Virus record (IMG/VR): IMGVR_UViG_3300036770_006296
Location: 124,001 to 188,000 of that record
DNA length: 64,000 bases
Direction: 5' to 3' (one strand)
Shown: piece by piece, positions 11,845-50,596 of the stretch
How positions within the stretch are numbered: the first letter of the stretch is position 1
Layout of the letters: each line of letters starts with the position of its first letter
Notes under the pieces: model-generated
Databases searched by the model: none
Told to the model about the DNA's origin: nothing
Seen by the model: only the letters and a program-made list of their open reading frames with translations
Made by a program: the position numbers and the translations under genes

Positions 11845-12489
11845 ATGAGATATATTAAATCAATAGATCAATTTATAAACGAGCAGCTATTTTCTGATGC
11901 TAATAGATTTGCTAAATTACTAGGTTTAGGAGGAGGTGAGGCAGGTGCTTCTGGCTCAGACTCTCCCAGCGGACCAGTTTCCACTTCCCGAAATGACGAG
12001 GCATCGTGCCCAAACTACGACTGCTGGACTCACTTTGGTAAGGATGCTTTTTGGAACGGAACAAGTCAAATAGGAGGTAGAACAGTACCAAAGATAACAA
12101 TCCAAAAATCTCCAACATCTTTTAATATTAATTATGATGGACCTGCTTCGGGATTTCTACTTAAACATGCCAAAGGGGGTAAAGGAGATACTATCCATCA
12201 GTTATTAAATGTTCTAACATTAGAGCTTAATGAGTACCTTAAAACTATAAGTGTCAAGCCTGACGTGAAAAATATTAAGATGGAAATGGTGGGAAGTAAA
12301 TTAAGTGTTTCTGTTCCTCTTGTTAAGGTTCCCGAAGGCGTCCACTATCTTATAGCAAGAAGAGGAGGATTAGGTCATGGAGGGGATTTTACTGGACTAA
12401 TGAAATATAAAAAAATGGAAGGATACGAGGAGGCTAAGCACAAATCGGGTAGTCTCACAGAAAAGTTTGTAACGGTAATAAGCAAATAG
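11845..12489 (+). CDS. NEQLF-module protein 1 (unknown C-terminal domain)
   Basis: MRYIKSIDQFINEQLFSDANRFAKLLG then Gly/Ser linker. Confidence 0.8.
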   Translation: MRYIKSIDQFINEQLFSDANRFAKLLGLGGGEAGASGSDSPSGPVSTSRNDEASCPNYDCWTHFGKDAFWNGTSQIGGRTVPKITIQKSPTSFNINYDGPASGFLLKHAKGGKGDTIHQLLNVLTLELNEYLKTISVKPDVKNIKMEMVGSKLSVSVPLVKVPEGVHYLIARRGGLGHGGDFTGLMKYKKMEGYEEAKHKSGSLTEKFVTVISK

Positions 12490-12494
12490 TTTAT
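12417..12494 (+). repeat. 78-bp direct repeat, copy 1
   Basis: 76/78 identical to 13497-13574; covers the 3' end of the 11845 gene. Confidence 0.95.
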
Positions 12495-12500
12495 ACTAGT

Positions 12501-13490
12501 ATGAAAGATCTTAAATATATTTTATTGTTTGAAAATTTTTCTAATGCTATTGATATTAATGAAAATGCTAAAGAAAATTTAAAAACATCCACTAAATTTT
12601 TAAGACTAAAGCCTAGATTTTTATCGAAGATCAAAAAGATCCTTGGTGTATCTAATGATAAAGAACTTGCTAAAGAAGACATCAAGCAATTTCAGAAAAA
12701 AAGAGGAATAAAAGAGGATGGTAATTTAGATCACAGAACTATTCTTTCCGGGTTAAAAGGTGAAGAACCAGATAACACTAATAATCTCTCCAAAGAAACC
12801 CCTACTATACCGGGTGAAAAATCTCCCATAAAAAATGCTAAAGCTAATGAGAATTTTATAAGTGAAGAGAACGAGACCGATTATTTAGCTAAATATACGT
12901 CGCAAAAAAAACAAGTAATAGGGTTCTTAAACTCGATATTTCCTTCAACGTTACCTTTTATAAATGATAAGGTTGATTCCGCTATCCCGCCTAAATTTGA
13001 AAAGTGCTATACAGTAAATTATCTAGTTTCCTCTAAGGAGGTTTGCTTTAGTGCGGGTCTTAGTGTTGAAATTAAATCAATAAAAATAAAAGACGCTACA
13101 TTCACTGCTCCCACAGAGTTTAAAGCAGATGGATATGTTAAAGGTAAACTAAAAGGGACTGTTGATCTTAAATTTTTTGCCCATATTATAGGGGAAAAGG
13201 GAATAGGCGATGATCTTTCGATAGATTTCGAGCAGAACGTTTGGTTTTATAAATTCTCTCAAATACAGATATATCCTCCATTATTAAACATATCAACAAA
13301 GATCTATGATCTTGGGGTTGTTTGGGCTTGGGTTTCTAATAATAATTTCAAAATAGAAAACTCATTAATTGGAACATATAAATGGGATCTTCCTATCCAA
13401 AAGAACGTAAACACATGTTTTGATCCTAAAGGAGGACCTTACATAAAAAATGTATCATCTTCGGATCTTAATAAATGGATATCCATATAA
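12501..13490 (+). CDS. Hypothetical protein, CTS-like N-terminus, PG-binding-like motif
   Basis: MKDLKYILLFENF; IKQFQKKRGIKEDGNLDHRT resembles PG_binding_1; flanked by the 78-bp repeats. Confidence 0.75.
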   Translation: MKDLKYILLFENFSNAIDINENAKENLKTSTKFLRLKPRFLSKIKKILGVSNDKELAKEDIKQFQKKRGIKEDGNLDHRTILSGLKGEEPDNTNNLSKETPTIPGEKSPIKNAKANENFISEENETDYLAKYTSQKKQVIGFLNSIFPSTLPFINDKVDSAIPPKFEKCYTVNYLVSSKEVCFSAGLSVEIKSIKIKDATFTAPTEFKADGYVKGKLKGTVDLKFFAHIIGEKGIGDDLSIDFEQNVWFYKFSQIQIYPPLLNISTKIYDLGVVWAWVSNNNFKIENSLIGTYKWDLPIQKNVNTCFDPKGGPYIKNVSSSDLNKWISI

Positions 13491-13496
13491 AGGCAG

Positions 13497-13574
13497 GGAA
13501 GGATACGAGGAGACCAAGCACAAATCGGGTAGTCTCACAGAAAAGTTTGTAACGGTAATAAGCAAATAGTTTAT
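13497..13574 (+). repeat. 78-bp direct repeat, copy 2 (orphan gene 3' end)
   Basis: Encodes EGYEETKHKSGSLTEKFVTVISK*; exactly 1080 nt from copy 1. Confidence 0.95.
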
Positions 13575-13605
13575 TTTCGGATATATAAAAAATATTAGAT
13601 AAAAA

Positions 13606-14313
13606 ATGAGACACCTTAGATCTTTTGAAGAAATAAACGAACATCTCGGAGGCAGAGATACAAGCAGCATCGATAGAATGAAAGCTAAATATCCTAAAGG
13701 CATAGAAATACCACGGAGTATCACAGCAAAAGGGACGGGAGCTTTTGAAATTGGCGTAGACTCATTAGATCCTAAATCTAAAAAATTCTTAGATATAGTC
13801 CAATTAATTAATGATCTACTTCAAAACTCTAAAGGAACTGTTAACGTTACTGTTAGTGCTGGAGCCTCTGCAGTAGGACAGGGAAGATATGATAATCAAG
13901 GTCTTGCTGAAAGAAGAAGAGATAACACTATAAAAGCTCTTAAAAACTATCCATTCATTGACCCAAGCAGAATTAAATTTACCGCAGGTAAGGCGATTGT
14001 TGGTAAATCTACGGTCAAAGACTCAAAAGAGGCAGAAGCTGAACAATTTGTTAGTGTTGACATTTCTGGAACTGGAAGCTTAAATGTTCCTGTGACTGGA
14101 GTAGAAGGAGATAACACTAACGTTTATCGTCCTGAGCTTTTTAAAAATTCTTTAGATAAGGATGATAACATACCTGTAGATATAAAAAGAATCTGTATCC
14201 AATTACCTAAGCCTTATGTTGAAAAATTTGTTAAAATGTTAGGGGAATTTAGAAAGGAGAATAATTTTAAGACAATACCTTACGGAATCTATGACATCCT
14301 TCCTAAAAAATAA
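13606..14313 (+). CDS. OmpA-like (peptidoglycan-binding) domain protein, CTS-like N-terminus
   Basis: MRHLRSFEEINE; VTVSAGAS...YDNQGLAERRRDNTIKAL resembles the OmpA-C N..L...RA motif. Confidence 0.65.
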   Translation: MRHLRSFEEINEHLGGRDTSSIDRMKAKYPKGIEIPRSITAKGTGAFEIGVDSLDPKSKKFLDIVQLINDLLQNSKGTVNVTVSAGASAVGQGRYDNQGLAERRRDNTIKALKNYPFIDPSRIKFTAGKAIVGKSTVKDSKEAEAEQFVSVDISGTGSLNVPVTGVEGDNTNVYRPELFKNSLDKDDNIPVDIKRICIQLPKPYVEKFVKMLGEFRKENNFKTIPYGIYDILPKK

Positions 14314-15232
14314 TGGTGATTTCCTCAAAAAAAATAAGGACAACTTAAAAATAGATGAGGGTACTTCATTTGAAGGTATAAGACTTGCTTATAAAAGAGC
14401 TAAGGAAATTGCTTATAACGTTTTCAATGCCTTTAAAACTGAGGGAAGAGAAACCACAGAGATGATGAGGGTTTTCAATTATCATCTAAGAAAAAAACTC
14501 AGACTAGATACCAGAGGGGATCAACCAACAGAGGATGAATTTAAAAATGCACTGGAACAATTAAAAGAAATTCCTAAGCTAGCCCCTTATGCTATTATTT
14601 TATTGACTTCTCCTATACCTTTTTCTTCTACTATGTACACAGGTTTAGGTGTATATCTAAGAAAAATTTCTGGAGGATATATTAATTTATTACCTGATTC
14701 ATTCAATGATATTTTCAAAAAGAATGAAATCGCTGGACTGGAAGAAAAACACAAGCATGGGAATATTCTTAAGTACTCTAAATTTTATGACGATTTTTTT
14801 GTTTATGAATCTATGATTAATGAAATAGGTGAAGCAAACATAGAACATCTTCCATGGAACGTTGTATATAGTAACAAAAAAGAAGCTCTCTATAGTTTCT
14901 ATTTTGGGCCAGAACTTTACGAAGTACATATAGAAAGAAAATCTTTAGAAAACATAACTATGTATTTCTCATGCGACGGTAATCGTGACGATATTACTAA
15001 TGCTGGGCATCCATTTACAATAATGGGAACTATTATCGGGATTCTAAAAGATTATCTTAGTAATAATCCAGAGGTTAAAACTTTTTCTTTTGTTCCTAGT
15101 ATATCTTATGAGGATGATAGAAGAAGACTTAATCTTTACAAAGCCTATATAGTAAAGAACTTTCCTGGCGCAAGGATAACGACCGAGAATTTGCCTAGGG
15201 GATATGTTGGGGTTGATGTTACAATAAAGTAA
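14291..15232 (+). CDS. Two-domain hypothetical protein with internal CTS-like peptide
   Basis: Internal NILKYSKFYDDF..MINE precedes a domain similar to 6494-7060 (DDRRRLNLYKAYI vs DDRRSRIYGHFI). Confidence 0.75.
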   Translation: MTSFLKNNGDFLKKNKDNLKIDEGTSFEGIRLAYKRAKEIAYNVFNAFKTEGRETTEMMRVFNYHLRKKLRLDTRGDQPTEDEFKNALEQLKEIPKLAPYAIILLTSPIPFSSTMYTGLGVYLRKISGGYINLLPDSFNDIFKKNEIAGLEEKHKHGNILKYSKFYDDFFVYESMINEIGEANIEHLPWNVVYSNKKEALYSFYFGPELYEVHIERKSLENITMYFSCDGNRDDITNAGHPFTIMGTIIGILKDYLSNNPEVKTFSFVPSISYEDDRRRLNLYKAYIVKNFPGARITTENLPRGYVGVDVTIK

Positions 15233-15663: not shown

Positions 15664-15690
15664 AAAAAGATCCTAGATAATTTAATTTTT

Positions 15691-16393: not shown

Positions 16394-16427
16394 TGAGATA
16401 TATATTTTTATCTAATAAATAATCGAC

Positions 16428-17138: not shown

Positions 17139-17164
17139 AGGATATATAATATTATATTTATAAA

Positions 17165-18061: not shown

Positions 18062-18077
18062 AAAATAAAATGAATTA

Positions 18078-19274: not shown

Positions 19275-19275
19275 A

Positions 19276-24716: not shown

Positions 24717-25577
24717 ATGAGACAACTTAAGATCACATCGAGTATTACAAGTAGGGAAGATAAAGCTTTAGAAAAATATTTACAAGATATTTCAAAGGAG
24801 GAAATGATTACTGCCGACGAGGAAACACATTTAACCAGAAGAATAAAAGATGGGGACCAGGAGGCTTTAGATAAAATGGTTAGAGCAAACTTAAGATTCG
24901 TTGTGTCAGTTGCCAAGCAATATCAACATCAAGGTCTTCCCCTGGTTGATCTAATAAACGAGGGAAATGTTGGACTGATAAAAGCTGCTAAAAAATTCGA
25001 TGAGACAAGGGGATTTAAGTTTATATCGTATGCTGTTTGGTGGATTAGACAAGCAATAATGGAAGCTCTTTCAGAGAAAGCGAGAGTTATAAGAATACCT
25101 TTAAATCAAGTTGGTGTTTTAAGTAAAATAAACAAGGCATATGCTAGATTAGAGCAGGATCTAGGTAGAGCTCCATCCTCTGAAGAGATAGCAGATGAAC
25201 TGGATCTCCCAGAACAGAAAGTCAAAGACACTTTAAGCAGTTCGAGAAATCATGTATCCTACGACGCTCCAATGGGGGGTGACCAAGAAAACTCCTCAAT
25301 GATAGAAGTACTAAGCAACGATTTCCCCTCAACAGATTCTATAATGATAGAGGAATCCTTAAGGGTTGATATTGAAAGAAGTCTCTCCGCCTTAGATCCT
25401 AAATGTAGAGAGATAATAAAATTAAACTACGGAATAGGATACACACATCCTAAATCATTAGATGAGATTGGTGAAAAATACTCTCTGACTAAGGAAAGAG
25501 TAAGACAGATTAGAGAAAAGGGTCTTAGAAAGCTAAGGGTTGAATCTAGAAGCAAAACACTAAAACAATATCTCTAG
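24717..25577 (+). CDS. rpoD: RNA polymerase sigma-70 factor, Bacteroidota primary-sigma type
   Basis: MRQLKITSSIT.RE..LEKYLQDI; NLRFVVSVAKQY; DLINEGNVGL; KFISYAVWWIRQ; LTKERVRQIREK; no region 1.1. Confidence 0.95.
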   Translation: MRQLKITSSITSREDKALEKYLQDISKEEMITADEETHLTRRIKDGDQEALDKMVRANLRFVVSVAKQYQHQGLPLVDLINEGNVGLIKAAKKFDETRGFKFISYAVWWIRQAIMEALSEKARVIRIPLNQVGVLSKINKAYARLEQDLGRAPSSEEIADELDLPEQKVKDTLSSSRNHVSYDAPMGGDQENSSMIEVLSNDFPSTDSIMIEESLRVDIERSLSALDPKCREIIKLNYGIGYTHPKSLDEIGEKYSLTKERVRQIREKGLRKLRVESRSKTLKQYL

Positions 25578-31974: not shown

Positions 31975-32955
31975 ATGGTAAAGAAAAAAGGACCTATCAG
32001 TATGTTTATAGAAAGAAACTATAAACACTTTAATGCAGCAGCTCTAAAAGATGCTGCTATAGGATATGAAACACACATCGACGGTGGAGGAAAAATGCTG
32101 GTCTCTCTTGCTGGTGCAATGAGCACAGCAGAACTTGGTATTTCTCTTGCTGAAATGATTAGAGCTGGTAAAGTTGATATTATTTCTTGTACTGGTGCCA
32201 ACCTAGAAGAAGATCTCATGAATCTTGTAGCACATTCACATTACAAGAGAATACCTAATTACAGAGATCTTACCCCAAAAGAGGAGCGTGATTTATTAGA
32301 CAATGGACTTAATAGAGTTACAGATACTTGCATTCCGGAGGAAGAAGCATTCAGAAGACTACAGAATCACATATATGATATATGGAAAAAAGCAGAAAGC
32401 AGAGGAGAAAGACACTTTCCACACAAATACATGTACGAATTAATAAATAGCGGAGTGTTAGAGCAGTACTATGAAATTGATCCTAAGGATTCATGGATGG
32501 TTGCAGCAGCAGAGGTGAATTTACCTATGGTTGTTCCAGGGTGGGAAGATTCCACCTTAGGAAACATCTTTGCTTCGTATGTAATAAAAGGTGACTTGAA
32601 GCACGACACTGTAAAAAACGGGATAGAGTATATGGTTTCTTTAAGCCATTGGTACAGGGAAAATTGTCAAGAGCCAGGAATAGGATTCTTCCAGATAGGT
32701 GGGGGAATTGCCGGGGATTTTCCTATCTGTGTTGTACCTATGATGTACCAAGATCTTGAATGGGAGGATGTACCATTTTGGTCTTATTTCTGTCAAATTT
32801 CGGATTCAACAACATCTTATGGTTCTTATTCAGGAGCAGTACCAAATGAAAAGATTACTTGGGGCAAATTGGACGCAGACACCCCTAAATTTATTGTAGA
32901 ATCGGATGCCACAATAGTTGCTCCCCTGATTTTTTCATGGATATTAAATAAATAG
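31975..32955 (+). CDS. Deoxyhypusine-synthase-like protein (bacterial type)
   Basis: HFNAAAL; ISCTGANLEED; IGGGIAGDF; SYSGAVPNEKITWGK with catalytic Lys position. Confidence 0.9.
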   Translation: MVKKKGPISMFIERNYKHFNAAALKDAAIGYETHIDGGGKMLVSLAGAMSTAELGISLAEMIRAGKVDIISCTGANLEEDLMNLVAHSHYKRIPNYRDLTPKEERDLLDNGLNRVTDTCIPEEEAFRRLQNHIYDIWKKAESRGERHFPHKYMYELINSGVLEQYYEIDPKDSWMVAAAEVNLPMVVPGWEDSTLGNIFASYVIKGDLKHDTVKNGIEYMVSLSHWYRENCQEPGIGFFQIGGGIAGDFPICVVPMMYQDLEWEDVPFWSYFCQISDSTTSYGSYSGAVPNEKITWGKLDADTPKFIVESDATIVAPLIFSWILNK

Positions 32956-33051
32956 AGTTTGAATATATATTAGATGAAAGAGATATACGGCCTATTGATA
33001 TTCTCTATAGTTATTTTATTAGCAGGCTATATCAACATAAAAAAAGAAAAA

Positions 33052-33783
33052 ATGAAGCATCTTAAAAGTATAGATGAATTTAAAATAGCAAATGAACAGC
33101 TTTTTTCTGACGCTAATAAATTTTCTAAGCTCTTCGGATTAGATTCACCATCTAAAGACTCAAGTGATAATAAAGATTCATCTTCAGGAGGGACAGATTC
33201 TTCTGGAGCATCCTCATCAATTTCTGCCAAAACAGAACTTGGTAATTATGGTAAATTTAGTGAAGCATCTAAGAAAAATGCTCCTCTAATTATGGTTTAT
33301 GGAGGTATAGATGTAGGAGGCAAAAAGAGTGGAGAATATATGTATGACTATTTAGGAAAAATAGGAAGCTCCGCTAATATTTTTGTGGCAAAGGATCACA
33401 AAGTAGATGGCAAAGGATCATACAAAGCAGTCAAAGATAAATTGTCTGAAAAATCGATATCGCCTTCTAAAAAAATATTATATCTTTTTTCTGGAGGATA
33501 TAAACCAGGAATGGAATTATTAAATAGTGTTTCGGCTTCAGAGTTCGACTTAATATATCTAGTTGATATTTGGATGGGTAATTCAAAAGTTGCTTCCTTT
33601 TATAAAAATTTAGCAGAGAATAATAGAGGTAAGGTTAGGTATTTTTATAGCGGAGACGGAGCTCAAAATGCAGATGCAAAAAACAGTTTAATTAAAACTC
33701 TGAACTTCTACAAGTCAAATGATCAAAACAATCATATGGCAACAAACACAGATGCCGTCTCTGATCTATCAAATAAATTATAA
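33052..33783 (+). CDS. NEQLF-module protein 2, alpha/beta-hydrolase-like C-terminal domain
   Basis: MKHLKSIDEFKIANEQLFSDANKFSKLFG; Ser linker; LYLFSGG, IYLVD, late His; an in-frame ATG at 32974 would add a 26-aa TM leader. Confidence 0.7.
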   Translation: MKHLKSIDEFKIANEQLFSDANKFSKLFGLDSPSKDSSDNKDSSSGGTDSSGASSSISAKTELGNYGKFSEASKKNAPLIMVYGGIDVGGKKSGEYMYDYLGKIGSSANIFVAKDHKVDGKGSYKAVKDKLSEKSISPSKKILYLFSGGYKPGMELLNSVSASEFDLIYLVDIWMGNSKVASFYKNLAENNRGKVRYFYSGDGAQNADAKNSLIKTLNFYKSNDQNNHMATNTDAVSDLSNKL

Positions 33784-33784
33784 A

Positions 33785-34561
33785 ATGAAACACATAAAGA
33801 ACATACAAGAATTTAATCACCTTTATGAACAGTTATTTGCTGCTGATATTGCAAAATTTAACAAATTGATGGGTATATCAGTGGAAGAAACCGGTATGGA
33901 GGAACCAAATATATCTCCTGCTGAAAATCCTTCTGGTTCAGGGTCAGCCTTTGCTTCTGTTGTTAAACTTAACACCAGTCAGTTAGATGAATATGGATCA
34001 ACTGTTGGGATTAGTGAAAAAGGAGATAATGCTCCATTACAGCAGCCAGCAAGAGGGCCTTTAGGAAATATAGTAAATTCAGCTTATGCTAACTTAAATG
34101 TTTCAACTAGAAAAATACCAGGGACTCTCGGAGGTAATTTAGGTTGTGCAGCAGCAGTTTCCATTATATTTTATAGAGCTACTGGATACGCAATAGCTGG
34201 TTCTGGAGCTATCACACTAGGCACCGCTCACATGTGGAACCATTTTGAAAAAGAAAGCAGAAATCCCAGCGGAGTTTGGCAGAAAATAACTAATTGGAAG
34301 ACTGACTCACAGCCTGGAGATATAATATTAACATCTAGAGGGTCTAAAGCAGGACACGTGGGTGTTGTTGTAGAGGGAGGTAACATTATATCAAATTCTT
34401 CTGGAGGATTCCAAGGAGATAAAAAAGGACAGATCGAGCTAAACTATAATCTAAACACATGGCAAAGTGTTGCTAATAGAAATCCACAGCAAACTGCTTC
34501 TTTTAGATATAAAGGACCCTATAAAAACACCTGGGGTAAAACGGAAAAACCAGTAGCATAG
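33785..34561 (+). CDS. NEQLF-module protein 3, NlpC/P60-like papain-fold domain
   Basis: Start moved to 33785 (MKHIKNIQEFNHLYEQLF); GGNLGCAAAVS (Cys), QPGDIIL, GHVGVV (His), ISNSS. Confidence 0.75.
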   Translation: MKHIKNIQEFNHLYEQLFAADIAKFNKLMGISVEETGMEEPNISPAENPSGSGSAFASVVKLNTSQLDEYGSTVGISEKGDNAPLQQPARGPLGNIVNSAYANLNVSTRKIPGTLGGNLGCAAAVSIIFYRATGYAIAGSGAITLGTAHMWNHFEKESRNPSGVWQKITNWKTDSQPGDIILTSRGSKAGHVGVVVEGGNIISNSSGGFQGDKKGQIELNYNLNTWQSVANRNPQQTASFRYKGPYKNTWGKTEKPVA

Positions 34562-40937: not shown

Positions 40938-41750
40938 ATGATACTTAAATTAGGCTCCAAAGGTACAGCGGTAGAAAAACTACAGAATTTTTTAGGTGTA
41001 CCGATCAATGGAAATTTCGACGAAAGCGTAGATAAAGCTTTAAAAACTTGGCAAAAATCAAACGGATTAAAAGATGATGGTATAGCAGGACCAATCACTC
41101 TTAAAAAAATGGGTATAATCCTAGAATCCGATATCCCTGTTCCTACTTCTTCTTTTAAACTTGATAAGTTAAAAGGACATATTCCCGATTCTGTTATAGC
41201 TCAAATACCAGATACCGCAGCTAAATTTGGAATAACAAACGTGCTTAGACTTTCGCATTTTCTTGCACAGTGTGGGCACGAGTCTGGAGGTTTTAAGGCA
41301 GTATCAGAAAATCTTAACTATTCAGCCGATGGTTTAAAAAAGATATTTGGAAAATATTTCCCTGGTAATCTTAATGAGTCATATGCTAGACAACCAGAAA
41401 AAATTGCTGCTAGAGTTTACGGAAGTAGAATGGGAAATGGCGATGAAGCTTCCAAAGACGGATGGAAATTTAGAGGAAGAGGATACATCCAATTAACAGG
41501 AAAATCTAATTACGAAGCATTCGACAAATTTGTAGATGATGACATATTAGGTAATCCAGATTTAGTTGCAACCAAATACCCTCTAATGTCAGCAGCTTGG
41601 TTTTTCAATAAAAATGGTCTATGGACTATTTGTGATAAGGGCGCGGATGATGCAACGGTTACTGCTGTTACAAAAAGAGTAAACGGAGGAACTATAGGAT
41701 TATCTGATAGGATTAAACATTTTAAAGAGTATTATTCTTTGCTTAAATAA
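40938..41750 (+). CDS. Endolysin: PG-binding domain plus GH19 (chitinase-like lysozyme) domain
   Basis: LKLGSKG.AV..LQ...WQK.NGL..DGIAGP.T; HFLAQCGHESG; FRGRGYIQLTGKSNY; VTKRVNGG; behind GGATATATA. Confidence 0.9.
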   Translation: MILKLGSKGTAVEKLQNFLGVPINGNFDESVDKALKTWQKSNGLKDDGIAGPITLKKMGIILESDIPVPTSSFKLDKLKGHIPDSVIAQIPDTAAKFGITNVLRLSHFLAQCGHESGGFKAVSENLNYSADGLKKIFGKYFPGNLNESYARQPEKIAARVYGSRMGNGDEASKDGWKFRGRGYIQLTGKSNYEAFDKFVDDDILGNPDLVATKYPLMSAAWFFNKNGLWTICDKGADDATVTAVTKRVNGGTIGLSDRIKHFKEYYSLLK

Positions 41751-42705: not shown

Positions 42706-44472
42706 ATGTCTACTCTATCTAAAATCTCTCTGGTATTATCTGCTTTAATAATGTCTATTTATTTTAGTATACAATCTCTATTAGTTTTCAATTATATCGA
42801 TTATACGGAATCTTTGGGTAGATTTGAATATGGATGTTTCGTTTTATTTGTCCCACTTTTTTCGATAGTTGTTAGAGAGTTTATAATAAAAAATAAGAGG
42901 AGTATTAAATTAAATATCTATGGTAAAAAATTAAATGACGTTCTTGTGAAGCAGTCGCATAATAGATTATTCTATAATGGAAATCTATCAGAGGCTGCTA
43001 AAGAATTAACTAAAGAGGTCACACAATCCATTAATGTTGAGAGATGCTCAGTTTGGCTATACAATAGGGATAAAACATCAATAGTTTGCCAACAGCTTTA
43101 TATTAAGTCAGAGTACACTTGGTATCAGGGATCTGAATTACTCGAGAAAGACTTTAGGCCCTATTTTGATGCTTTGAAAAATAATCCTGTCATTGTAGCA
43201 AATAATGCAGAGAAACATCCCTCTACATCTTGCTTTAGTGAAGTTTATTTAAAACCATTGGGCATAAAATCGATGTTAGATGTACCTATCCTGTTTAAAG
43301 GTGATGTAATAGGAGTAATATGTATAGAGAGCTTAGTAAAAAAAGAATGGTGTGAATTCGAGATTAATTTTTCCAAGTTGCTCTCTTCCTTATATACTTT
43401 TTCTTATTCAGTAAAAGAAAACAAAAAACAAGATCAAAAAATAGATGACATTAATAATTTTATAGATGAAGCTGCCCTTGTTTCTAAAACAGACGCAAAG
43501 GGAAAAATTGTATATGTGAATAAAAAATTCGAGGAGGTATCAGGATGGAGTCTGAAAGAAGTAATAGGTAAGGACCACAATATAGTTAATTCAGGTGAAC
43601 ATCCCAAGGAAATGTGGGCAGAAATGTATAAGAGTGTTTTAGTAGATAAAAATATTTGGAATAGGGTTATTACAAACAAAGCAAAAGATGGACATTTATA
43701 CCATGTGGACACTTATATAAAAGCGGAATTCGACACGGAGACTGGAGATCTAATAGGATTTATTTCTATCAGGCAGGATGTAAGTAAAATAGTATATACA
43801 TTACAAGAGATAGACAAGAAAAATACTTATTTAGAACATGCTGCTAAAATAATTAGACATGACATGCACTCGGGAATAAACACCTATATTCCAAGGGGGA
43901 TTAGCTCACTAGAAAGAAGACTTTCCGACGAAGATATAAAAAATCTTAAAATAGAAGCTCCATTAAAAATGATTAAAGAAGGGCTTAGACATACTCAAAA
44001 GGTATATAAAGGAGTTTATGAGTTTACTAATCTTGTTAAAAAGGACGCAGCCCTTAACAAGGATGAAATAGATCTAAAGTATATCCTCGACGATTATCTT
44101 TCTTCGACTGCTTATAAAAGCCAGGTTGATATATCAAACTTAGGAAAGTTTAGTGTCAATGAGGCTCTTTTTTGCACTGCAATTGATAATTTAATAAGGA
44201 ACGGACTTAAATATAATGATAGTAACAACAAATCTGTAAAAATATCAAGAATAGGAAATATTATTTATGTTGAAGACAATGGTAGAGGCTTAACATCTGA
44301 AGAATTTAAGACTCTTTCTAAACCATATACTAGGAAGGAGGGTCAAAAAGAAACCGGTACTGGCTTAGGATTAAATATATGTATATCAATACTCAAAGAA
44401 CACGGATTTTCAGTCGATTGTGAAAAAAAGGTTGAAGGCGGATCTAGAATAAAAATAAAGTTAGATAAATGA
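42706..44472 (+). CDS. Sensor histidine kinase (2 TM-GAF-PAS-HisKA-HATPase)
   Basis: GAF ERCSVWL...LDVPI...IGVICIE; PAS VNKKFEEVSGW...HNIVNSGEH...NKAKDG; H box IIRHDMHSG; N box DNLIRNGLKY; G1 VEDNGRG; G2 GTGLGL. Confidence 0.92.
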   Translation: MSTLSKISLVLSALIMSIYFSIQSLLVFNYIDYTESLGRFEYGCFVLFVPLFSIVVREFIIKNKRSIKLNIYGKKLNDVLVKQSHNRLFYNGNLSEAAKELTKEVTQSINVERCSVWLYNRDKTSIVCQQLYIKSEYTWYQGSELLEKDFRPYFDALKNNPVIVANNAEKHPSTSCFSEVYLKPLGIKSMLDVPILFKGDVIGVICIESLVKKEWCEFEINFSKLLSSLYTFSYSVKENKKQDQKIDDINNFIDEAALVSKTDAKGKIVYVNKKFEEVSGWSLKEVIGKDHNIVNSGEHPKEMWAEMYKSVLVDKNIWNRVITNKAKDGHLYHVDTYIKAEFDTETGDLIGFISIRQDVSKIVYTLQEIDKKNTYLEHAAKIIRHDMHSGINTYIPRGISSLERRLSDEDIKNLKIEAPLKMIKEGLRHTQKVYKGVYEFTNLVKKDAALNKDEIDLKYILDDYLSSTAYKSQVDISNLGKFSVNEALFCTAIDNLIRNGLKYNDSNNKSVKISRIGNIIYVEDNGRGLTSEEFKTLSKPYTRKEGQKETGTGLGLNICISILKEHGFSVDCEKKVEGGSRIKIKLDK

Positions 44473-45074
44473 AAAAAATATTTTTAATTATTATCCTATT
44501 GGGGATAAGGGGATTTTGCTTTTCTCAAAACTTTTATCCGATACAAACAATTTTAAAAGGAGATTCTGTTGTTATATACACGCTAGAACAGTCTCAAGAT
44601 ATAAATCTAATGATACAGAATCAAAAATCATTAAATGTAAGCTATAAGAGCAAATATGAGCACTATCTAGGAAAAACAGACAGTTTAGAAAAAATAGTAG
44701 CTGCGCAACTGTACTTGATTGATAGCTTAAGATTAGTTCAAAAAAATCAAGATAGCTTGGAAAAAAAATTACACACAATAGAAAGTTGGTTAGTAAAAGC
44801 ATCAATCGATAACTCTTACCTCTATATGTCATGGCAGGATTCTAAAATTAAATCGGTGGACCTAACATTATATACTGTTCATTGCAGTATGCAAACAGGA
44901 ACGATAAGAATGGTTAGGAGAGGTCCTAATGATGAATTTTATACCTGGAAAGGAATAAACCACACAAGAAGAGAAAGCCCCTCCATTAACTGGGAATTAA
45001 AATATCCAGAGGAAGATAGGCCGATAGTTAATAATTTACCAGTAGATATCAAAATAAGTCAATATGTAAGATGA
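44469..45074 (+). CDS. Secreted/periplasmic hypothetical protein in two-component cluster
   Basis: Signal peptide ending FCFSQ; overlaps both kinase genes. Confidence 0.75.
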   Translation: MKKIFLIIILLGIRGFCFSQNFYPIQTILKGDSVVIYTLEQSQDINLMIQNQKSLNVSYKSKYEHYLGKTDSLEKIVAAQLYLIDSLRLVQKNQDSLEKKLHTIESWLVKASIDNSYLYMSWQDSKIKSVDLTLYTVHCSMQTGTIRMVRRGPNDEFYTWKGINHTRRESPSINWELKYPEEDRPIVNNLPVDIKISQYVR

Positions 45075-46510
45075 AAAAAATAGTGCTTTTAGTAGTAATA
45101 CTATTCTCTTTCCAGAGCTTTTCTACCGCTCAAGGAATAACCCCGAATAAAAAATCTATAGTTGAAGCTGTTTGGGATCAAGGAATACCAGTTTGTCCTG
45201 ATGACAAATACATATCTTCACTTATCGACAAAGTTGGATTTGATAATCTAAGAAATAATAAAAAACCTATTGATAAGAATGAAGCTAAATTGTGTAGGGA
45301 GATAGGGATTGCTTTTTACAATAGGGGAATGTATGAAGCTGCTGACTGGTATTTAGAAAGAGTCAGAGGATACGTTGAGGTTGTAGAACTCGAGCCGGAG
45401 GTGGTTTTTGAAACACCCAAGCAGGAAGAGGAAGAGGAGGATGTTTCTATAGATGATATAAAAAGTCTAGAAGCGGACAAGGAATTTTTACAAAATCTTC
45501 CTAAAAGTTACGACAACGTTTCTCCCGGTGACATGAAAAAGTTAGCGGACCAAATTGAAGACCAAATAAAAAAGCTCATTGCAGAAAAAGAAGCTTTATT
45601 AAAAAGAAATGCTCCTAAATCTGTTATAGATGCTAAGGATGCTGCTATAGGATCTTTAGGAAAAGAAAAAGAAATCATAGACCTATCTATAGAAAAAGAA
45701 GATTTAGAGGTAGAAGTAGTTGACTTAGAAGACGATAAAAAAGTATTAAGGAAATATTTAATAGGATCCGTTATAGGAATTATTATAGCTATTTTAGCAA
45801 TAATAGCTCTACTACAAAGGAAAACAATAAGAGTAAAAGACGTAGAGCTAGAAAAGCAGTTAGATGATATCAATAAGAAAAATACTTATCTTGAATATGC
45901 TGCTAGAATTATTAGACATGATATGCACAGTGGTATTAATACTTATATGCCTAGAGGCCTTTCCTCTCTACAGAAAAGAATGGATCAGGAAAAAATCGAT
46001 GAACTAAAGATCGGTCCTTCTTTAAAGATGATTTCAGAGGGATTAGCACACACCCAAAAGGTATATAAAAATGTATATGAATTTACAAATCTCGTAAAAG
46101 TTAAGGCAGATTTTAGTACTAAAGAAATAGATCTAAAGGAGGCTTTGGAGAAATATCTAGCTAACACCTCATACAGAAATCAAGTTGTAATAGATGATCT
46201 TGGTTTGGTAAATGCTAATGAGCAATTGTTTTGTAATGCAATAGATAATCTGATTAAAAATGGCCTCAAATACAACGAGAAAAACGACAAATGTGTTAAG
46301 ATATATAAGGAAGTAGATGTAATAGTTGTTGAAGATAATGGTATAGGATTAACGTCTAAAAAATTCGAAGAATTAATCAAAAAAGGCATTGATACAGAAT
46401 CTGATACCGGTATTGGATTAAGTATTACAAAAGCAATTATTGAAGAACATGGCTATTCCATCTTTTGTGAGAAAGTTGAGAATGGCACAAAAATGAAAAT
46501 AAAAATATAA
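45071..46510 (+). CDS. Sensor histidine kinase (signal peptide, coiled coil, TM, HisKA, HATPase)
   Basis: IIRHDMHSGINTY; DNLIKNGLKY; VEDNGIG; GIGLSI; kinase core closely similar to 42706 gene. Confidence 0.9.
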   Translation: MKKIVLLVVILFSFQSFSTAQGITPNKKSIVEAVWDQGIPVCPDDKYISSLIDKVGFDNLRNNKKPIDKNEAKLCREIGIAFYNRGMYEAADWYLERVRGYVEVVELEPEVVFETPKQEEEEEDVSIDDIKSLEADKEFLQNLPKSYDNVSPGDMKKLADQIEDQIKKLIAEKEALLKRNAPKSVIDAKDAAIGSLGKEKEIIDLSIEKEDLEVEVVDLEDDKKVLRKYLIGSVIGIIIAILAIIALLQRKTIRVKDVELEKQLDDINKKNTYLEYAARIIRHDMHSGINTYMPRGLSSLQKRMDQEKIDELKIGPSLKMISEGLAHTQKVYKNVYEFTNLVKVKADFSTKEIDLKEALEKYLANTSYRNQVVIDDLGLVNANEQLFCNAIDNLIKNGLKYNEKNDKCVKIYKEVDVIVVEDNGIGLTSKKFEELIKKGIDTESDTGIGLSITKAIIEEHGYSIFCEKVENGTKMKIKI

Positions 46511-46511
46511 A

Positions 46512-46943
46512 ATGATTAATTCTATACTATTAGTTGATGATGAGGATTTATTCCACTTAGTTTTTGAAGATGCCTGCAGTCTTTTGGATATAACACTTTC
46601 TCTTGAAAGTCTAACTTCTGCTGATGAAGCAGAGAAACTGTTTAAAGCATGGCACAAAGAAGCCGATGGAAAACCTGAGTGTGTGTTTGTAGATCTTAAT
46701 ATAATAGGTTCTTCTTTCGATGGCATAGAGCTAATAAGAAAAATAAATTTTGAATACGGTAATCATGTTGTTATCGGTATTATCTCCTCATCAAACGAAC
46801 CAGAGGAACAATCAAAAGCTTTACAGGCCGGAGCTCAGTTTTGGATAATAAAATCCGACGACATAGAACCTAGGTTAGAGGATTTTAAAAAAGATTATGA
46901 GGGATATAAAAACAGAACAAATTCGTTCAAGGTTTATAAATAG
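46512..46943 (+). CDS. Single-domain response regulator (receiver)
   Basis: ILLVDDE; VFVDLNI phospho-Asp; IISSS; IIKS; no output domain. Confidence 0.9.
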   Translation: MINSILLVDDEDLFHLVFEDACSLLDITLSLESLTSADEAEKLFKAWHKEADGKPECVFVDLNIIGSSFDGIELIRKINFEYGNHVVIGIISSSNEPEEQSKALQAGAQFWIIKSDDIEPRLEDFKKDYEGYKNRTNSFKVYK

Positions 46944-46948
46944 AATAT

Positions 46949-47626: not shown

Positions 47627-48196
47627 TTATTCAAATCTTTTTTCTTCCGCTATAGAATTTAAATATTCGTTCAGTTCTAGTTCTTTTCCTCCTTTACTTA
47701 CAAACAGAGTATATTTATTATTATCCGCTTCCTCATCGGTCGTTCTATCTATGACATCGTCAGCTCCTAGTTTGAATTTTATTCTATTTGCTAAATCTGA
47801 TCTTGTTTTTTCGTCATTGAATTCCCATTGATATTCAGAAATAATGTTTGTTATTTCCTCTCTAATTATATCCGATTCAACACTAGAGGGAAGCAAATTA
47901 TTAAGATATACTACATTTGATAAATGCGATGCAATAGTAGGAACTAGATACATTTTCATCATAAGAACCGGGGTCATAGAAACTTCATCTATCCAAGACT
48001 CAAATTCAAAATCCATGATCTTGTCTTTGTGTGTATGTATGTAATCCTCGATAACTTCGATACATCCCTCATAGTCCTCTATAAGATCCTCTATAGTAAA
48101 AGGAAAAAACTTTTTAATTGTTTTTGGTCCTCTCTGAAGAGATTCTATTTTTTCAAATATTGAATCTCTAATATCAACTTTTATATTTTTTTCCAT
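47627..48196 (-). CDS. Hypothetical protein
   Basis: 189-aa ORF; WEFNDEKTR segment. Confidence 0.7.
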   Translation of the reverse strand: MEKNIKVDIRDSIFEKIESLQRGPKTIKKFFPFTIEDLIEDYEGCIEVIEDYIHTHKDKIMDFEFESWIDEVSMTPVLMMKMYLVPTIASHLSNVVYLNNLLPSSVESDIIREEITNIISEYQWEFNDEKTRSDLANRIKFKLGADDVIDRTTDEEADNNKYTLFVSKGGKELELNEYLNSIAEEKRFE

Positions 48197-48258
48197 ATTA
48201 TTTCTAGATATTTATTGTAAAAAAATTTCGTTCTCAATAGGATAAATAAAGATAAAAT

Positions 48259-48459
48259 ATGGACTATAGAGAATACCTTGAAAACATAAAAAAGAAACTA
48301 GACTCTTTAAATAAAGTTGCTGGAGTTAACCCAGAAGCAGACAGGGAGCTTAAAAAACAAATGCAACAATCTCAGATGCCATCCGATGAGATATTCGATA
48401 TGTTAGGGCACGGTGCTAAAATGTGGATGGATAAGAATAAAAATCAAAATCCTTTGTAA
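48259..48459 (+). CDS. Small hypothetical protein
   Basis: 66-aa ORF. Confidence 0.6.
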   Translation: MDYREYLENIKKKLDSLNKVAGVNPEADRELKKQMQQSQMPSDEIFDMLGHGAKMWMDKNKNQNPL

Positions 48460-48510
48460 CTAATCTGGCTTTAGACCGTAAGAAGTTTATAATCCATTAA
48501 AAATGTATTA

Positions 48511-49392
48511 ATGCGGGATTTTAAAATAATTAACCGGATAACAAATACCTCTGATAATCTAAACCGATACTTCAATGAAATATCAAAATATGAATTATTA
48601 AGTGCTGAGAAAGAGGCTGAACTTGCTTTTAAAGCTAAGGCTGGTGACGAAAAAGCTAAAGAAGCAATATTAAAATCTAATCTAAGATTTGTTATTTCTG
48701 TTGCAAAATCGTATGTTTCTGGCAACTCCCCACTGGAAGATCTTATATCTGAAGGAAACAAAGGATTAGTAGAAGCAGTCGAAAATTTCGATCCGACTAC
48801 CGGATTCAAATTTATTAGTTATGCTGTTTGGCATATTAGGAAAAACATACTTGTATATCTTAATAATCACACAAGATCCATAAGAATCCCTTCTAACGTA
48901 AATAATGAGATGCGAAAATATCATGCTATAGAGGAATCTTTTATCTCTTATAATGGTAGGGAACCTTCAATAGATGAGATGCTAGAGATAATAGAAAATC
49001 CTGAATATGGGATCCAGATTTCTAACGCCACAATAGATACAATTAAAAACACCCCGTTATCTATTCCTCTCGAAAATTACGGAAAAGAAAATGACGAGAT
49101 TGGCTCTCCTCTAAGTTGGTTGCAATCATCTGAAAATAGTGATGGTATAACATTGAGTGACGATATCAGGAATATTATCTTGCGAGTTCTTTCAGAGTTA
49201 AAGCCTATGGAAAGGGAAGTTACTATTTTAAAATACGGACTTGGAGACTCAAAAGAACCTATGAGCTATAAAGCTATAGGGGAGAAGCTAGAAAAAACAA
49301 CAGAATGGGCTAGGATTATTTCTAAGAAAGCTGAAATGAGGATGAAGGCTATTATTAGGAGAAGAAAAATAAAAGAATTATTCTTCGATTAA
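48511..49392 (+). CDS. Second, divergent sigma-70 family factor
   Basis: NLRFVISVAKSY; DLISEGNKGL; FKFISYAVWHIRK; region 4 TTEWARII. Confidence 0.9.
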   Translation: MRDFKIINRITNTSDNLNRYFNEISKYELLSAEKEAELAFKAKAGDEKAKEAILKSNLRFVISVAKSYVSGNSPLEDLISEGNKGLVEAVENFDPTTGFKFISYAVWHIRKNILVYLNNHTRSIRIPSNVNNEMRKYHAIEESFISYNGREPSIDEMLEIIENPEYGIQISNATIDTIKNTPLSIPLENYGKENDEIGSPLSWLQSSENSDGITLSDDIRNIILRVLSELKPMEREVTILKYGLGDSKEPMSYKAIGEKLEKTTEWARIISKKAEMRMKAIIRRRKIKELFFD

Positions 49393-49706
49393 GCTAGTTC
49401 CATTTCCTCTATTCTAAAAGGCAATTTAGTTCCGTATCTGTACATACAAAAATGATCAAATTCTTCTTCGTTCATTTTGTCAGTGTGGAACTCCATTTCA
49501 TCCCACAGAACTTTATTATTCTTGTCTTTTAAATAGAGATCGAAAACATCTTTGCCTTTCTCTATCTTTTTTACGAGAGAGTTATTTAGATCTTTTTTTA
49601 TTTTTTCCGCTCTTTCTTTAGAGATTGTTATTTTTTCAATCCACTCTTTTCTAGACCCTTCTTCAATTACAGATCCTCTTATTATGTAAGCTTTCTTATT
49701 ATTCAT
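49389..49706 (-). CDS. Hypothetical protein
   Basis: Start moved to ATG 49706 (MNNKKAY). Confidence 0.65.
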   Translation of the reverse strand: MNNKKAYIIRGSVIEEGSRKEWIEKITISKERAEKIKKDLNNSLVKKIEKGKDVFDLYLKDKNNKVLWDEMEFHTDKMNEEEFDHFCMYRYGTKLPFRIEEMELA

Positions 49707-49768
49707 ATCTGCTAATTTAATAAATAAATTAAAAAGCAAAAGGATATATAAAGATAATAGAGACAAAA

Positions 49769-50596
49769 ATGAGACATCTTAAATCATTAGAAGAGTTTAG
49801 AATAGTTAATGAGCAGCTATTTAAAGATGGCGAAGCATTAATGAAACTCTTAAGCGGAGGTAAACTTCAGGATTCTCCTGTAGAAGGATCAGTAACAATA
49901 AAAGGAGGAGCTATATCAGGGGATAAAGCCAAAAATGCACAAGCAGTGATAAATTCTATGAATAAGCATGGAATAACAAACCCTTACACACAAAAAGCAA
50001 TACTAGGTGTAATTGGTAAAGAGTGCGGGTTCATACCTCAAAATGAGACATCATACTCTACCACTTCTTCTGCTAGAATAAGAAGTATATTTGGTGAAAG
50101 AGTTAGTAAAATGACTGATGCACAGATTGATCAGTTAAAAAAGAACGATGAAGCTTTCTATAATTACCTGTACGGCGGAAGATACGGAAATGCTCCTAAT
50201 GAGGGATACAAATATAGAGGTAGAGGATTTAATGGTATAACATTCAAAGGGGTTTACCAAAAAATGAATGATCTCATGAATCGGATTGGAAAGCTGGATA
50301 GAAAGGTTGATCTAGTGGCTAATCCAGATGTCATTAATGATATAGATGTTGCTGCAGAATCTGCAGTGCTTTATTTTATAGACAGGGCTTCTTCCCCAGA
50401 AATGAACAAGAAATATGGTGTTAAGGATCTAAACGGATTCAAAGACGAGGAAACAGCAGTTAAAGCTATGGTTCATGCAAATGCTGGATGGGGATCTAAT
50501 ATGAATTCTCCGTTTCTAGCAACTAGCTTAAATAAGGCTAAGGATATGGCTAAGCAATTTAGTATTGCAGATTTAGGTCAAAATAATTTAGCTTAA
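49769..50596 (+). CDS. NEQLF-module protein 4, GH19/lysozyme-like domain
   Basis: MRHLKSLEEFRIVNEQLFKDGEALMKLLSG; AILGVIGKECG...QNE; YRGRGFNGITFKGVY. Confidence 0.8.
   Translation: MRHLKSLEEFRIVNEQLFKDGEALMKLLSGGKLQDSPVEGSVTIKGGAISGDKAKNAQAVINSMNKHGITNPYTQKAILGVIGKECGFIPQNETSYSTTSSARIRSIFGERVSKMTDAQIDQLKKNDEAFYNYLYGGRYGNAPNEGYKYRGRGFNGITFKGVYQKMNDLMNRIGKLDRKVDLVANPDVINDIDVAAESAVLYFIDRASSPEMNKKYGVKDLNGFKDEETAVKAMVHANAGWGSNMNSPFLATSLNKAKDMAKQFSIADLGQNNLA

What the first reader, a model, noticed from the sequence alone, without database searches (positions are those of the whole stretch)
11845..50596. NEQLF module: constant N-terminal adaptor with swappable C-terminal domains (polymorphic-effector-like family)
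Seen: four dispersed genes continue past the tag with the same helix: INE-QLFSDANRFAKLLG (11845), ANE-QLFSDANKFSKLFG (33052), LYE-QLFAADIAKFNKLMG (33785), VNE-QLFKDGEALMKLLSG (49769). A Ser/Gly/Pro linker follows, then different domains: unknown, alpha/beta-hydrolase-like, NlpC/P60-like and GH19-like. Inference: cleavage after E exposes a shared amphipathic helix that docks envelope-degrading enzymes to a common site (tail tube, baseplate or ejection conduit). The architecture parallels polymorphic toxin systems. I know no description of it.
Basis: partly seen in the sequence, partly recalled or inferred. Interest (0 to 1): 0.8.

Follow-up and report, generated by a model that had tools for sequence, protein, structure and literature searches.

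The report
Shared leader on phage wall-degrading enzymes
Four cell-wall-attacking enzymes of an uncultured giant phage share a 30-residue N-terminal leader that looks like the signal phage T4 uses to load cargo proteins into its head, followed by a second helix that the enzymes of one genome keep alike.

Summary
Four genes (starts 11845, 33052, 33785, 49769) begin with a tag of the MKHLKSIDEF type, then an invariant EQLF, a short amphipathic helix and a Ser/Gly/Pro linker. The C-terminal domains differ: an unknown fold, an alpha/beta-hydrolase, a CHAP peptidase and a GH19 lysozyme.

The window is bases 124001-188000 of a 206.6-kb uncultured jumbo phage, probably of Bacteroidota.

An exhaustive profile search of 1.84 billion proteins found the NEQLF version only on these four families, in about ten related contigs. 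The C-termini are therefore not freely swappable.

The design is wider than this lineage. In distant relatives the orthologue of gene 1 sits beside SLT, CHAP and other genes that share a different, genome-specific leader. In one genome the leaders are nearly identical at DNA level, which indicates gene conversion.

The leader's first part resembles the T4 capsid targeting sequence (MKTYQEFIAE). It ends in [ILV]-N-E, and the same motif lies near the N-terminus of the major capsid protein in related phages that encode a T4 gp21-like prohead protease.

Most likely reading (confidence 0.5): a leader that targets the prohead and is cut by its protease, plus a second helix that the enzyme set shares. 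Cleavage and packaging are inferred, not shown. The protease gene was not found in the ~160 kb of the contig I could read.

The parts
11845..12489 (+). P1: module, linker and a 168-aa domain of unknown fold (invariant Cys55/Cys60, RRGGLGHGG motif)
   Evidence: ORF. 78 orthologues. AF2 pLDDT 84 with the domain at residues 47-214 confident. No fold match.
11845..11925 (+). P1 module: tag MRYIKSIDQF, then INE, then the QLF helix up to Gly27
   Evidence: Predicted helix at residues 7-25, low confidence.
33052..33783 (+). P2: module, Ser-rich linker and an alpha/beta-hydrolase with a Ser147-Asp172-His228 triad
32974..33051 (+). In-frame 26-codon hydrophobic extension upstream of the P2 tag; probably translated in this sub-lineage
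   Evidence: Conserved in orthologues. Differences by codon position against L006 are 6/1/11, like the coding domain at 26/13/72.
33785..34561 (+). P3: module, the conserved segment GISVEETG..EPN, and a CHAP / NlpC-P60 peptidase
49769..50596 (+). P4: module, linker and a GH19-type lysozyme domain
33052..33138 (+). P2 module (29 aa)
33785..33874 (+). P3 module (30 aa)
49769..49855 (+). P4 module (29 aa)
40938..41750 (+). Context: an untagged, endolysin-like gene (PG_binding_1 plus GH19). The tagged enzymes are therefore not the only lysis candidates.
7088..7891 (-). Context: a fifth tagged wall hydrolase (MKHILFFENF... plus CHAP) that has the generic tag but no EQLF helix

Best explanation
The 30-residue module has two parts.

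Part 1 (about 13-15 residues, M-K-H-[IL]-K-x-[IFL]-x-x-F-..-[ILV]-N-E) is the local form of a leader that about 28 ORFs of this window carry, as do hundreds of uncultured phage genes. It works like the T4 capsid targeting sequence. It takes the protein into the assembling prohead, where a gp21-type prohead protease removes it by cutting after the Glu.

Part 2 (Q-L-F plus about 11 residues, moderately amphipathic, ending in Gly) occurs only on the wall-enzyme set. After cleavage it would form the new N-terminus. A flexible Ser/Gly/Pro linker tethers it to the catalytic domain. It is kept alike among the enzymes of one genome. The likely reasons are that they all bind one partner or bundle with each other.

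The cargo is a GH19 glycosidase, a CHAP peptidase, a Ser-Asp-His esterase-like hydrolase and one unknown domain. It would travel in the virion and act on the host wall at infection. A separate untagged endolysin would serve lysis.

Shown: the module, selection on it at protein level, the concerted change between genomes, the domain identities, and the motif shared with capsid proteins of relatives.

Inferred: cleavage, packaging, and time and place of action.
For: 1. The module is real and under protein-level selection. EQLF is invariant in 39 sequences from the four families.

2. The two parts are separable. P1 lacks two residues between the tag and NE that P2-P4 have. P1 orthologues P0047 and P0048 carry a 28-residue Cys-motif insert exactly between '...EEFIFE' and 'VNEQLF'. 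The same insert follows 'EEFIAE' in window ORF 8290-8757.

3. The leader follows the genome, not the enzyme family.
- Between the window and contig L179, the post-NE 14-mers of the P1 orthologues share 1 of 14 residues.
- Within the window, P1 and P2 share 11 of 14. Within L179, the SLT, P1-type and 219-aa genes share 10-14 of 14.
- The L179 leaders are almost identical at DNA level over about 85 nt, with sharp borders.
- In L182, the P1-type and SLT genes share a third version.
- The L179 version sits on at least five C-terminal families.

4. Resemblance to the T4 CTS, MKTYQEFIAE (PMC8442874).
- The generic tag occurs in more than 120 IMG/VR stretches against about 1 expected. Its consensus is MKHIKLFEQF[IV][NS]E.
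- In tag-bearing contigs, tagged genes lie inside clusters of portal, gp21-like protease and MCP genes.
- The gene after the MCP in L200 starts MKTLKTYNQFIAE.

5. The same x-I-N-E motif sits near the MCP N-terminus. It reads MYANQLINE-AEV in 76 of 76 MCPs and ...WSEFINE-AAP in the isolate Chryseobacterium phage MA9V-2. In MA9V-2, two small head-cluster genes start MKTFTYFINE and MKNFFSFINE, beside an annotated prohead core serine protease.

6. Prohead proteases of T4, phiKZ and SPN3US all cut after Glu in a short motif (PMC5694885).

7. The lineage belongs with these phages. A relative has an MCP-like paralogue (E 1.7e-16 to the L200 MCP). The contig carries T4_Y16D, and relatives carry gp32.

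8. An untagged PG_binding_1 plus GH19 endolysin candidate exists.
Against: - No gp21-type protease, portal or full-size MCP was found in the parts of the contig I could read, about 38.5-198 kb of 206.6 kb. The head module must lie in the unread ~47 kb.
- No proteomic or structural data exist for any member, and no cultured phage carries P1-P3.
- The four genes lie among non-structural genes.
- About 28 tagged ORFs in 64 kb is far more cargo than T4 packs. The tag also sits on apparent metabolic enzymes elsewhere, so it could have another general role.
- In this sub-lineage P2 seems to start 26 codons upstream with a hydrophobic segment, so its tag would be internal.
- The T4 model does not explain why a second conserved helix is needed.
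Confidence: 0.5

Rival explanations
1. After cleavage, the QLF helix docks the enzymes on a tail component (tube lumen, baseplate or ejection conduit), so they are tail-associated lysins rather than head cargo.
For: - GH19 domains of the P4 type occur in proteins annotated as baseplate hub, structural lysozyme or tail fibre in other jumbo phages.
- In L179 the leader-bearing gene trio lies 2-6 kb from collagen-like, fibre-like genes.
- The helix changing in step within a genome fits one common partner.
Against: - The part of the leader shared with dozens of other genes matches a head-targeting precedent, and MCPs carry the same motif.
- No known tail protein uses a short cleavable N-terminal leader of this kind (my own knowledge).
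- In the window, the four genes are not in a tail module.
Confidence: 0.15
2. The enzymes are lysis-phase accessory enzymes. The amphipathic helix (and, for P2, the upstream hydrophobic segment) holds them at the cytoplasmic membrane until lysis, and the leader has nothing to do with virions.
For: - P2's upstream 26-codon hydrophobic extension evolves like coding sequence.
- The post-E helices are amphipathic (hydrophobic moment 0.38-0.59, in the top 1.5-3% of shuffles for three of the four).
- All identifiable domains are typical endolysin domains.
Against: - The module has no hydrophobic core and is near neutral, so it is neither a Sec, Tat or SAR signal nor a cationic membrane-active helix (sequence).
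- The extension is missing in several P2 orthologues.
- A canonical untagged endolysin candidate is present.
- This model does not explain the link between the tag and head-gene clusters in relatives.
Confidence: 0.15
3. The leader has no targeting role. It is a shared 5' coding cassette spread by recombination, or kept because it gives good translation starts in an AT-rich genome. The similarity within genomes is only gene conversion.
For: - The leaders in L179 are nearly identical at DNA level, with sharp borders.
- The tag uses AT-rich codons and sits on many unrelated genes.
Against: - In the window's lineage the four modules differ at many synonymous sites, yet EQLF is invariant across 39 sequences and about ten genomes. 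That points to selection on the peptide.
- The upstream DNA is not shared.
- The specific F-x-x-F-[ILV]-N-E pattern, and its presence inside MCP N-termini, is not what a translation leader would predict.
Confidence: 0.1

Closest known systems
T4 capsid targeting sequence (CTS) on internal proteins IPI-III and Alt, removed by prohead protease gp21
   Same: - A short N-terminal leader (T4: MKTYQEFIAE) that ends in hydrophobic-x-Glu.
- It is shared by otherwise unrelated cargo proteins; the T-even internal proteins are described as diverse apart from a conserved CTS (PMC3012670, PMC8442874).
- Relatives of this phage have near-copies (MKTLKTYNQFIAE) inside T4-like head gene clusters.
   Different: - The leader here is followed by a second conserved helix and a long flexible linker.
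- The cargo is wall-degrading enzymes, not small basic anti-restriction proteins.
- The tag sits on about 28 ORFs per 64 kb rather than about 4-5 per genome.
- Neither cleavage nor packaging has been shown.
Propeptide-bearing ejection proteins of giant phages (SPN3US, phiKZ, 201phi2-1)
   Same: - Jumbo phages pack many head proteins.
- Their N-terminal propeptides are cut after Glu (A-x-E or S/A/G-x-E).
- Paralogues gp53 and gp54 keep identical N-termini although the rest has diverged (PMC5694885).
   Different: - Those propeptides are mostly longer than 100 residues.
- They have no sequence similarity to this module.
- Their hosts are Proteobacteria.
Virion-associated peptidoglycan hydrolases (T4 gp5, T7 gp16, phiKZ gp181)
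   Same: Lysozyme, transglycosylase or peptidase domains are delivered with the particle to open the wall locally at entry (my own knowledge; Iyer et al., PMC7824862, for NlpC/P60 in jumbo phages).
   Different: Those domains are parts of large structural proteins. Here they are small stand-alone enzymes with a short common leader, encoded outside recognisable structural modules.
Polymorphic toxin systems (Zhang et al. 2012, cited in PMC7824862)
   Same: A constant N-terminal trafficking part with different C-terminal enzymatic domains. There are signs of recombination at the junction.
   Different: - There is no strain-to-strain C-terminal replacement within the lineage.
- No immunity genes or orphan C-terminal cassettes were seen.
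- The domains are wall hydrolases, not toxins.

Membership tests
T4-type CTS / prohead-protease-processed head cargo | Short N-terminal leader resembling MKTYQEFIAE | tested here: met
   - Window tags read MKHLKSIDEF..NE.
- ORF 8290 starts MIQHYEEFIAE.
- Relatives have MKTLKTYNQFIAE and MKRVKSYNQFIAE in head clusters.
This is resemblance only; homology cannot be proved for 10-13 residues.
T4-type CTS / prohead-protease-processed head cargo | Leader ends in a hydrophobic-x-Glu cleavage motif | tested here: met
   The four proteins read I-N-E, A-N-E, L-Y-E and V-N-E. Across 39 orthologues the motif is [ILVT]-[NSDY]-E.
T4-type CTS / prohead-protease-processed head cargo | gp21-family (S77) prohead protease and T4-like head genes in the same genome | tested here: inconclusive
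   - They were not found in contig positions ~38.5-198 kb. About 47 kb remains unread.
- They are present in other tag-bearing phages (L161, L162, L148, L200, MA9V-2).
- An MCP-like paralogue exists in a relative of the lineage.
T4-type CTS / prohead-protease-processed head cargo | Leader removed and mature protein present in heads | not testable with these tools
   This needs proteomics of particles or an in vitro protease assay.
Polymorphic toxin / effector systems | Same N-terminus with different C-terminal domains between closely related strains | tested here: not met
   All NEQLF hits fall in the same four orthologous families. Diversity of C-termini appears only between distant lineages, each with its own leader.
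Polymorphic toxin / effector systems | Cognate immunity gene or orphan C-terminal cassettes downstream | not tested
   Neighbouring genes were listed but not analysed for this. Nothing obvious was seen.
Sec / Tat / lipoprotein / SAR signal | Hydrophobic core of at least ~10 residues near the N-terminus | tested here: not met
   Mean Eisenberg hydrophobicity of the tag and helix is -0.3 to +0.2, and charged residues occur every 2-4 positions. The only exception is the optional upstream extension of P2.
GH19 lysozyme / endolysin (P4) | GH19 catalytic domain with the catalytic Glu | tested here: met
   PDB 4ok7 endolysin at 6.6e-9, with GKECGF aligned to GHESGG. phrog_181 at 5e-19.
CHAP / NlpC-P60 (P3) | Papain-like domain with Cys and His | tested here: met
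   PF05257 scores 27.9 bits against a cutoff of 26. The Cys (GNLGCAAA) and His (GHVGVV) motifs are visible in the sequence. The score is marginal.
Alpha/beta-hydrolase (P2) | Alpha/beta fold with a Ser-Asp-His triad in canonical order | tested here: met
   Foldseek matches to esterases and lipases at probability 1.00, E 2e-4. Ser147, Asp172 and His228 are invariant in 13 orthologues. The classic G-x-S-x-G elbow reads L-F-S-G-G. The substrate is unknown.

The most novel reading that the evidence does not exclude
The second helix (QLF... here, GFFDNPV...GSIFS or LI.AA..GER.A in other lineages) is a self-assembling element. It bundles the glycosidase, the peptidase, the esterase and the unknown P1 domain into one multi-enzyme complex that is loaded into the head and ejected as a unit. 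Gene conversion would keep the helices identical within a genome because they must pair with each other. This would be a new class of modular, virion-delivered wall-breaching complex, and it would provide a programmable cargo-loading tag for Bacteroidota jumbo phages.
Probability: 0.15. Interest if true: 0.8.

Novelty: new variant of a known kind. Interest (0 to 1): 0.55.

Why it matters
How giant phages choose the dozens of proteins they pack and inject is largely unknown outside T4 and the phiKZ group.

If the reading is right, a 13-residue leader marks the cargo in a large, mostly uncultured group of Bacteroidota phages. That group includes relatives of Tenacibaculum, Chryseobacterium and Prevotella (Lak) phages.

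Cargo could then be predicted from sequence alone. About 28 candidates lie in this window, among them a set of wall-degrading enzymes with their own second address helix.

The leader would also offer a simple handle for loading foreign proteins into such phages. It would also give a testable case of concerted evolution of a targeting peptide.

If the reading is wrong, the widespread tag remains an unexplained, strongly conserved N-terminal signature that is worth explaining.

Tried and rejected
- **Cultured relatives.** Megablast of 22 kb of the window and tblastn of P1, P2 and P3 against GenBank phages found nothing.
- **Literature.** A search for the tag or module as text strings found nothing. 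The jumbo-phage comparative paper PMC7824862 does not mention such a leader.
- **Fold of P1.** There is no significant match in PDB, BFVD or the ESM Atlas.
- **Looking for the head module.**
  - I walked the source contig with all 12 look-ups, two exact-word scans and one metagenome scan. This covered about 38.5-198 kb.
  - Only replication, regulatory and unknown genes turned up. No portal, protease or MCP was found.
  - PHROG scans of ten large unknown proteins from that walk gave no structural hits.
  - A search of IMG/VR with an MCP alignment returned only the 80 closest relatives of an abundant 40-150-kb group, not this lineage.
  - A match between the MA9V-2 'protease' protein and a 148-aa gene of this contig lies in a non-protease segment (DUF5856), so I discarded it.
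- **RNA or DNA element hypothesis.** I rejected it because of the synonymous differences and the unconserved upstream DNA.
- **L179 219-aa protein.** Its relation to P2 was not supported (hhalign probability 2%). Its GDS(L)-like motif is only a visual impression.
- **P0123.** It has no Pfam domain and no significant similarity to P3.

Full report
**1. Where the window comes from**

The four proteins match IMG/VR contig IMGVR_UViG_3300036770_006296 at 100% identity. This is JGI Ga0310126_0000076, 206,617 bp. The window is positions 124001-188000 of it. GC content is 33.7%.

No cultured phage is close at DNA level. P1, P2 and P3 have no tblastn match in 50,697 GenBank phage records.

The Dda-like helicase is closest to Flavobacterium and crAss-type phages. 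A capsid-like paralogue in a relative matches the capsid type of Bacteroidota jumbo phages. The host is therefore probably in the Bacteroidota; this is an inference.

**2.

The ORFs start at 11845 (P1, 214 aa), 33052 (P2, 243 aa), 33785 (P3, 258 aa) and 49769 (P4, 275 aa).

They align over about 30 residues with M1, K5, F10 and E-Q-L-F invariant. Elsewhere they are unrelated.

The EQLF codon pattern occurs 5 times against 0.82 expected, and 0 of 100 shuffles reach 5. Four of the five hits lie just after a tag-type start.

The four copies differ in 22 of 62 codon pairs that encode the same residue. Their upstream DNA is not alike. What is conserved is therefore the peptide. It is not an RNA or DNA element, and it is not a recent duplication.

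Each helix is followed by a low-complexity linker that AlphaFold2 leaves disordered.

**3. The C-terminal domains**

- **P4** is a GH19-type lysozyme. It matches PDB 4ok7 at 6.6e-9 with the catalytic Glu aligned, and phrog_181 at 5e-19. Its relatives include proteins annotated as structural lysozyme or baseplate hub in other jumbo phages.
- **P3** is a CHAP / NlpC-P60 peptidase, just above the Pfam threshold.
- **P2** folds as an alpha/beta-hydrolase (Foldseek probability 1.00). Ser147, Asp172 and His228 are invariant.
- **P1** has a confidently predicted domain (pLDDT above 90 for most of residues 47-214). It has no relative in PDB, BFVD, the ESM Atlas, Pfam or PHROGs. Its function is unknown.

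The window also encodes an untagged PG_binding_1 plus GH19 protein at 40938-41750. This is the obvious endolysin candidate. A fifth tagged wall hydrolase, a CHAP protein at 7088-7891 on the minus strand, lacks the EQLF helix.

**4. How far the module reaches**

- A DNA pattern for the module found it in IMG/VR only in about ten related contigs of 29-248 kb. It occurred only on orthologues of P1-P4, and exactly four times in the source contig.
- I built a profile from 39 module sequences, in which EQLF is invariant.
- I searched that profile against 1.84 billion cluster representatives. It gave 17 hits. Fifteen belong to the four families or are fragments of them, one is an unassignable 44-aa fragment and one is a chance repeat.
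For the NEQLF version, that condition is met.

**5. The design is nevertheless general**

P1 has 78 orthologues. In the more distant ones, the tag and a following [ILV]-N-E remain, but the helix after it is replaced by quite different sequences.

I fetched the genomic context of two such orthologues:

- **L179** (a 330-kb contig). Three adjacent genes are an SLT transglycosylase, the P1-type gene and a 219-aa gene. All start with one leader of the form MKKIKNFS.F.NEGFFDNPV..., which differs from the window's.
  - The three leaders are almost identical at DNA level over about 85 nt, with sharp borders on both sides. This is a mark of gene conversion.
  - A search with this leader found it on at least five C-terminal families.
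- **L182.** The P1-type, SLT and CHAP genes are adjacent. P1 and SLT share a third version of the helix.

The 14 residues after NE share 1 of 14 positions between the window's P1 and its L179 orthologue. Unrelated enzymes of one genome share 10-14 of 14. The leader thus evolves in concert within a genome. This points to a shared partner, mutual pairing, or both.

**6. The module is made of two parts**

P1 lacks two residues between the tag and NE that P2-P4 have.

Two P1 orthologues (P0047, P0048) carry a 28-residue Cys-containing insert placed exactly between '...EEFIFE' and 'VNEQLF'. The same insert follows 'MIQHYEEFIAE' in window ORF 8290-8757. The hydrophobic-x-Glu positions therefore behave as module junctions.

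**7. What the first part is**

About 28 ORFs of the window start with variants of MKHIKLFENF.

About one is expected by chance. The consensus is MKHIKLFEQF[IV][NS]E.

The T4 capsid targeting sequence is MKTYQEFIAE. It is cut off once inside the prohead (PMC8442874). T-even internal proteins are described as a diverse set that shares only this sequence (PMC3012670).

I compared T4 head proteins with all fetched loci. Several tag-bearing contigs have clusters of portal, gp21-like protease and MCP genes with tagged genes inside them. In L200 the gene after the MCP starts MKTLKTYNQFIAE.

In 76 of 76 MCPs of that group the N-terminus reads MYANQLINE-AEV.

This capsid type belongs to Bacteroidota jumbo phages: Tenacibaculum pT24, Chryseobacterium MA9V-1 and MA9V-2, Sphingomonas PAU and Prevotella Lak.

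In the isolate MA9V-2:
- the MCP has ...WSEFINE-AAP at residues 18-24;
- a small gene between the portal and the annotated 'prohead core protein serine protease' starts MKTFTYFINE;
- another small gene in the cluster starts MKNFFSFINE.

Prohead proteases of T4, phiKZ and SPN3US all cut after Glu in a short motif (PMC5694885).

The simplest reading is that F-[ILV]-N-E is the processing motif of this phage group and that the tag is its capsid targeting sequence.

**8. What is missing**

I could not find the protease, portal or full-size MCP of this genome. All 12 contig look-ups, two exact-word scans and one metagenome scan covered about 38.5-198 kb. They showed replication, regulatory and unknown genes only. 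About 47 kb stay unread.

Indirect links to T4-like phages are:
- a T4_Y16D family gene in the contig;
- gp32 in a relative;
- a 294-aa MCP-like paralogue next to the P4 orthologue in a relative.

Cleavage, packaging and the time of action are all inferred.

**9. A complication**

In this sub-lineage the P2 reading frame is open for 26 codons upstream (32974-33051) and encodes a hydrophobic segment. Orthologues keep it, and most differences fall in third codon positions (6/1/11, against 26/13/72 in the catalytic domain). Other orthologues lack it.

If it is made, the tag of P2 is internal, and cleavage after NE would free the enzyme from a membrane anchor. I cannot tell whether one or two products are made.

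**10. Verdict**

- It is partly wrong: the C-termini are not freely swappable, the architecture is not without precedent, and the docking site is more likely the prohead than the tail.

It is best filed as a new variant of the T4-type cargo-leader principle, extended by a second, concertedly evolving helix on a set of wall-degrading enzymes. Confidence in the head-cargo mechanism is about 0.5.

Noticed in passing
window, about 28 ORF starts, e.g. 1335, 2371, 9574, 10798, 13606, 18078, 28683 (+); 7891, 8257, 16393, 19671, 21271, 52199, 52937 (-): A large share of the ORFs start with variants of MKHIKLFENF / MRHLKSF..F, often followed by [ILV]-N-E. The same tag occurs in more than 120 IMG/VR stretches, on contigs of 4.8-482 kb. 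Some carriers elsewhere look like metabolic enzymes, e.g. a GRFQPFHNGH nucleotidyltransferase motif in L137.
   Followed up: partly
window 8290-8757 (+); also P0047 and P0048: This ORF starts MIQHYEEFIAE, nearly the T4 CTS. A small Cys motif (KKNPCWPGYKQIG...VPNCV) follows; it hits eight PHROG families of unknown function. The same motif is inserted between the tag and NEQLF in two P1 orthologues.
   Followed up: partly
window 32974-33051 (+): A 26-codon hydrophobic, in-frame extension lies upstream of the P2 tag. It is conserved with a coding-like substitution pattern in part of the lineage and absent in other orthologues. P2 may have two start sites or a membrane-anchored form.
   Followed up: partly
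window 42706-46943 (+): The phage encodes two sensor histidine kinases (one with GAF and PAS domains) and a response-regulator receiver protein in a row.
   Followed up: no
window 24717-25577 and 48511-49392 (+); L185 4419-5264: The window has two sigma-70 family factors, and the same contig has a third upstream of the window.
   Followed up: no
window 31975-32955 (+): A deoxyhypusine synthase family gene (PF01916, E 5.7e-40) lies directly upstream of P2.
   Followed up: no
L041 1601-2485 (-), contig IMGVR_UViG_3300042307_001176: A relative has a short (294-aa) paralogue of the major capsid protein (E 1.7e-16 to the L200 MCP; it also aligns to T4 gp23 residues 242-449). A second inserted gene sits beside it, next to the P4 orthologue. 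Both are absent from the window at the syntenic place, between 48196 and 48511.
   Followed up: partly
L179 12954-16976 (-) and 16948-20672 (+): Beside the leader-bearing enzyme trio of the 330-kb relative lie three genes made of Pro/Glu/Val-rich short repeats. Collagen-like (GPTG repeat) genes follow; they may be fibres.
   Followed up: no
window 50941-51615 (-): This ORF directly downstream of P4 looks by eye like a GIY-YIG homing endonuclease, between P4 and further tagged genes. I did not check it against a family library.
   Followed up: no
L191 3996-4526 (contig positions ~54.7-55.2 kb): A small SLT transglycosylase of 176 aa elsewhere in the same contig matches PHROGs for internal virion protein / lytic tail protein. 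I did not inspect its N-terminus for a tag.
   Followed up: no
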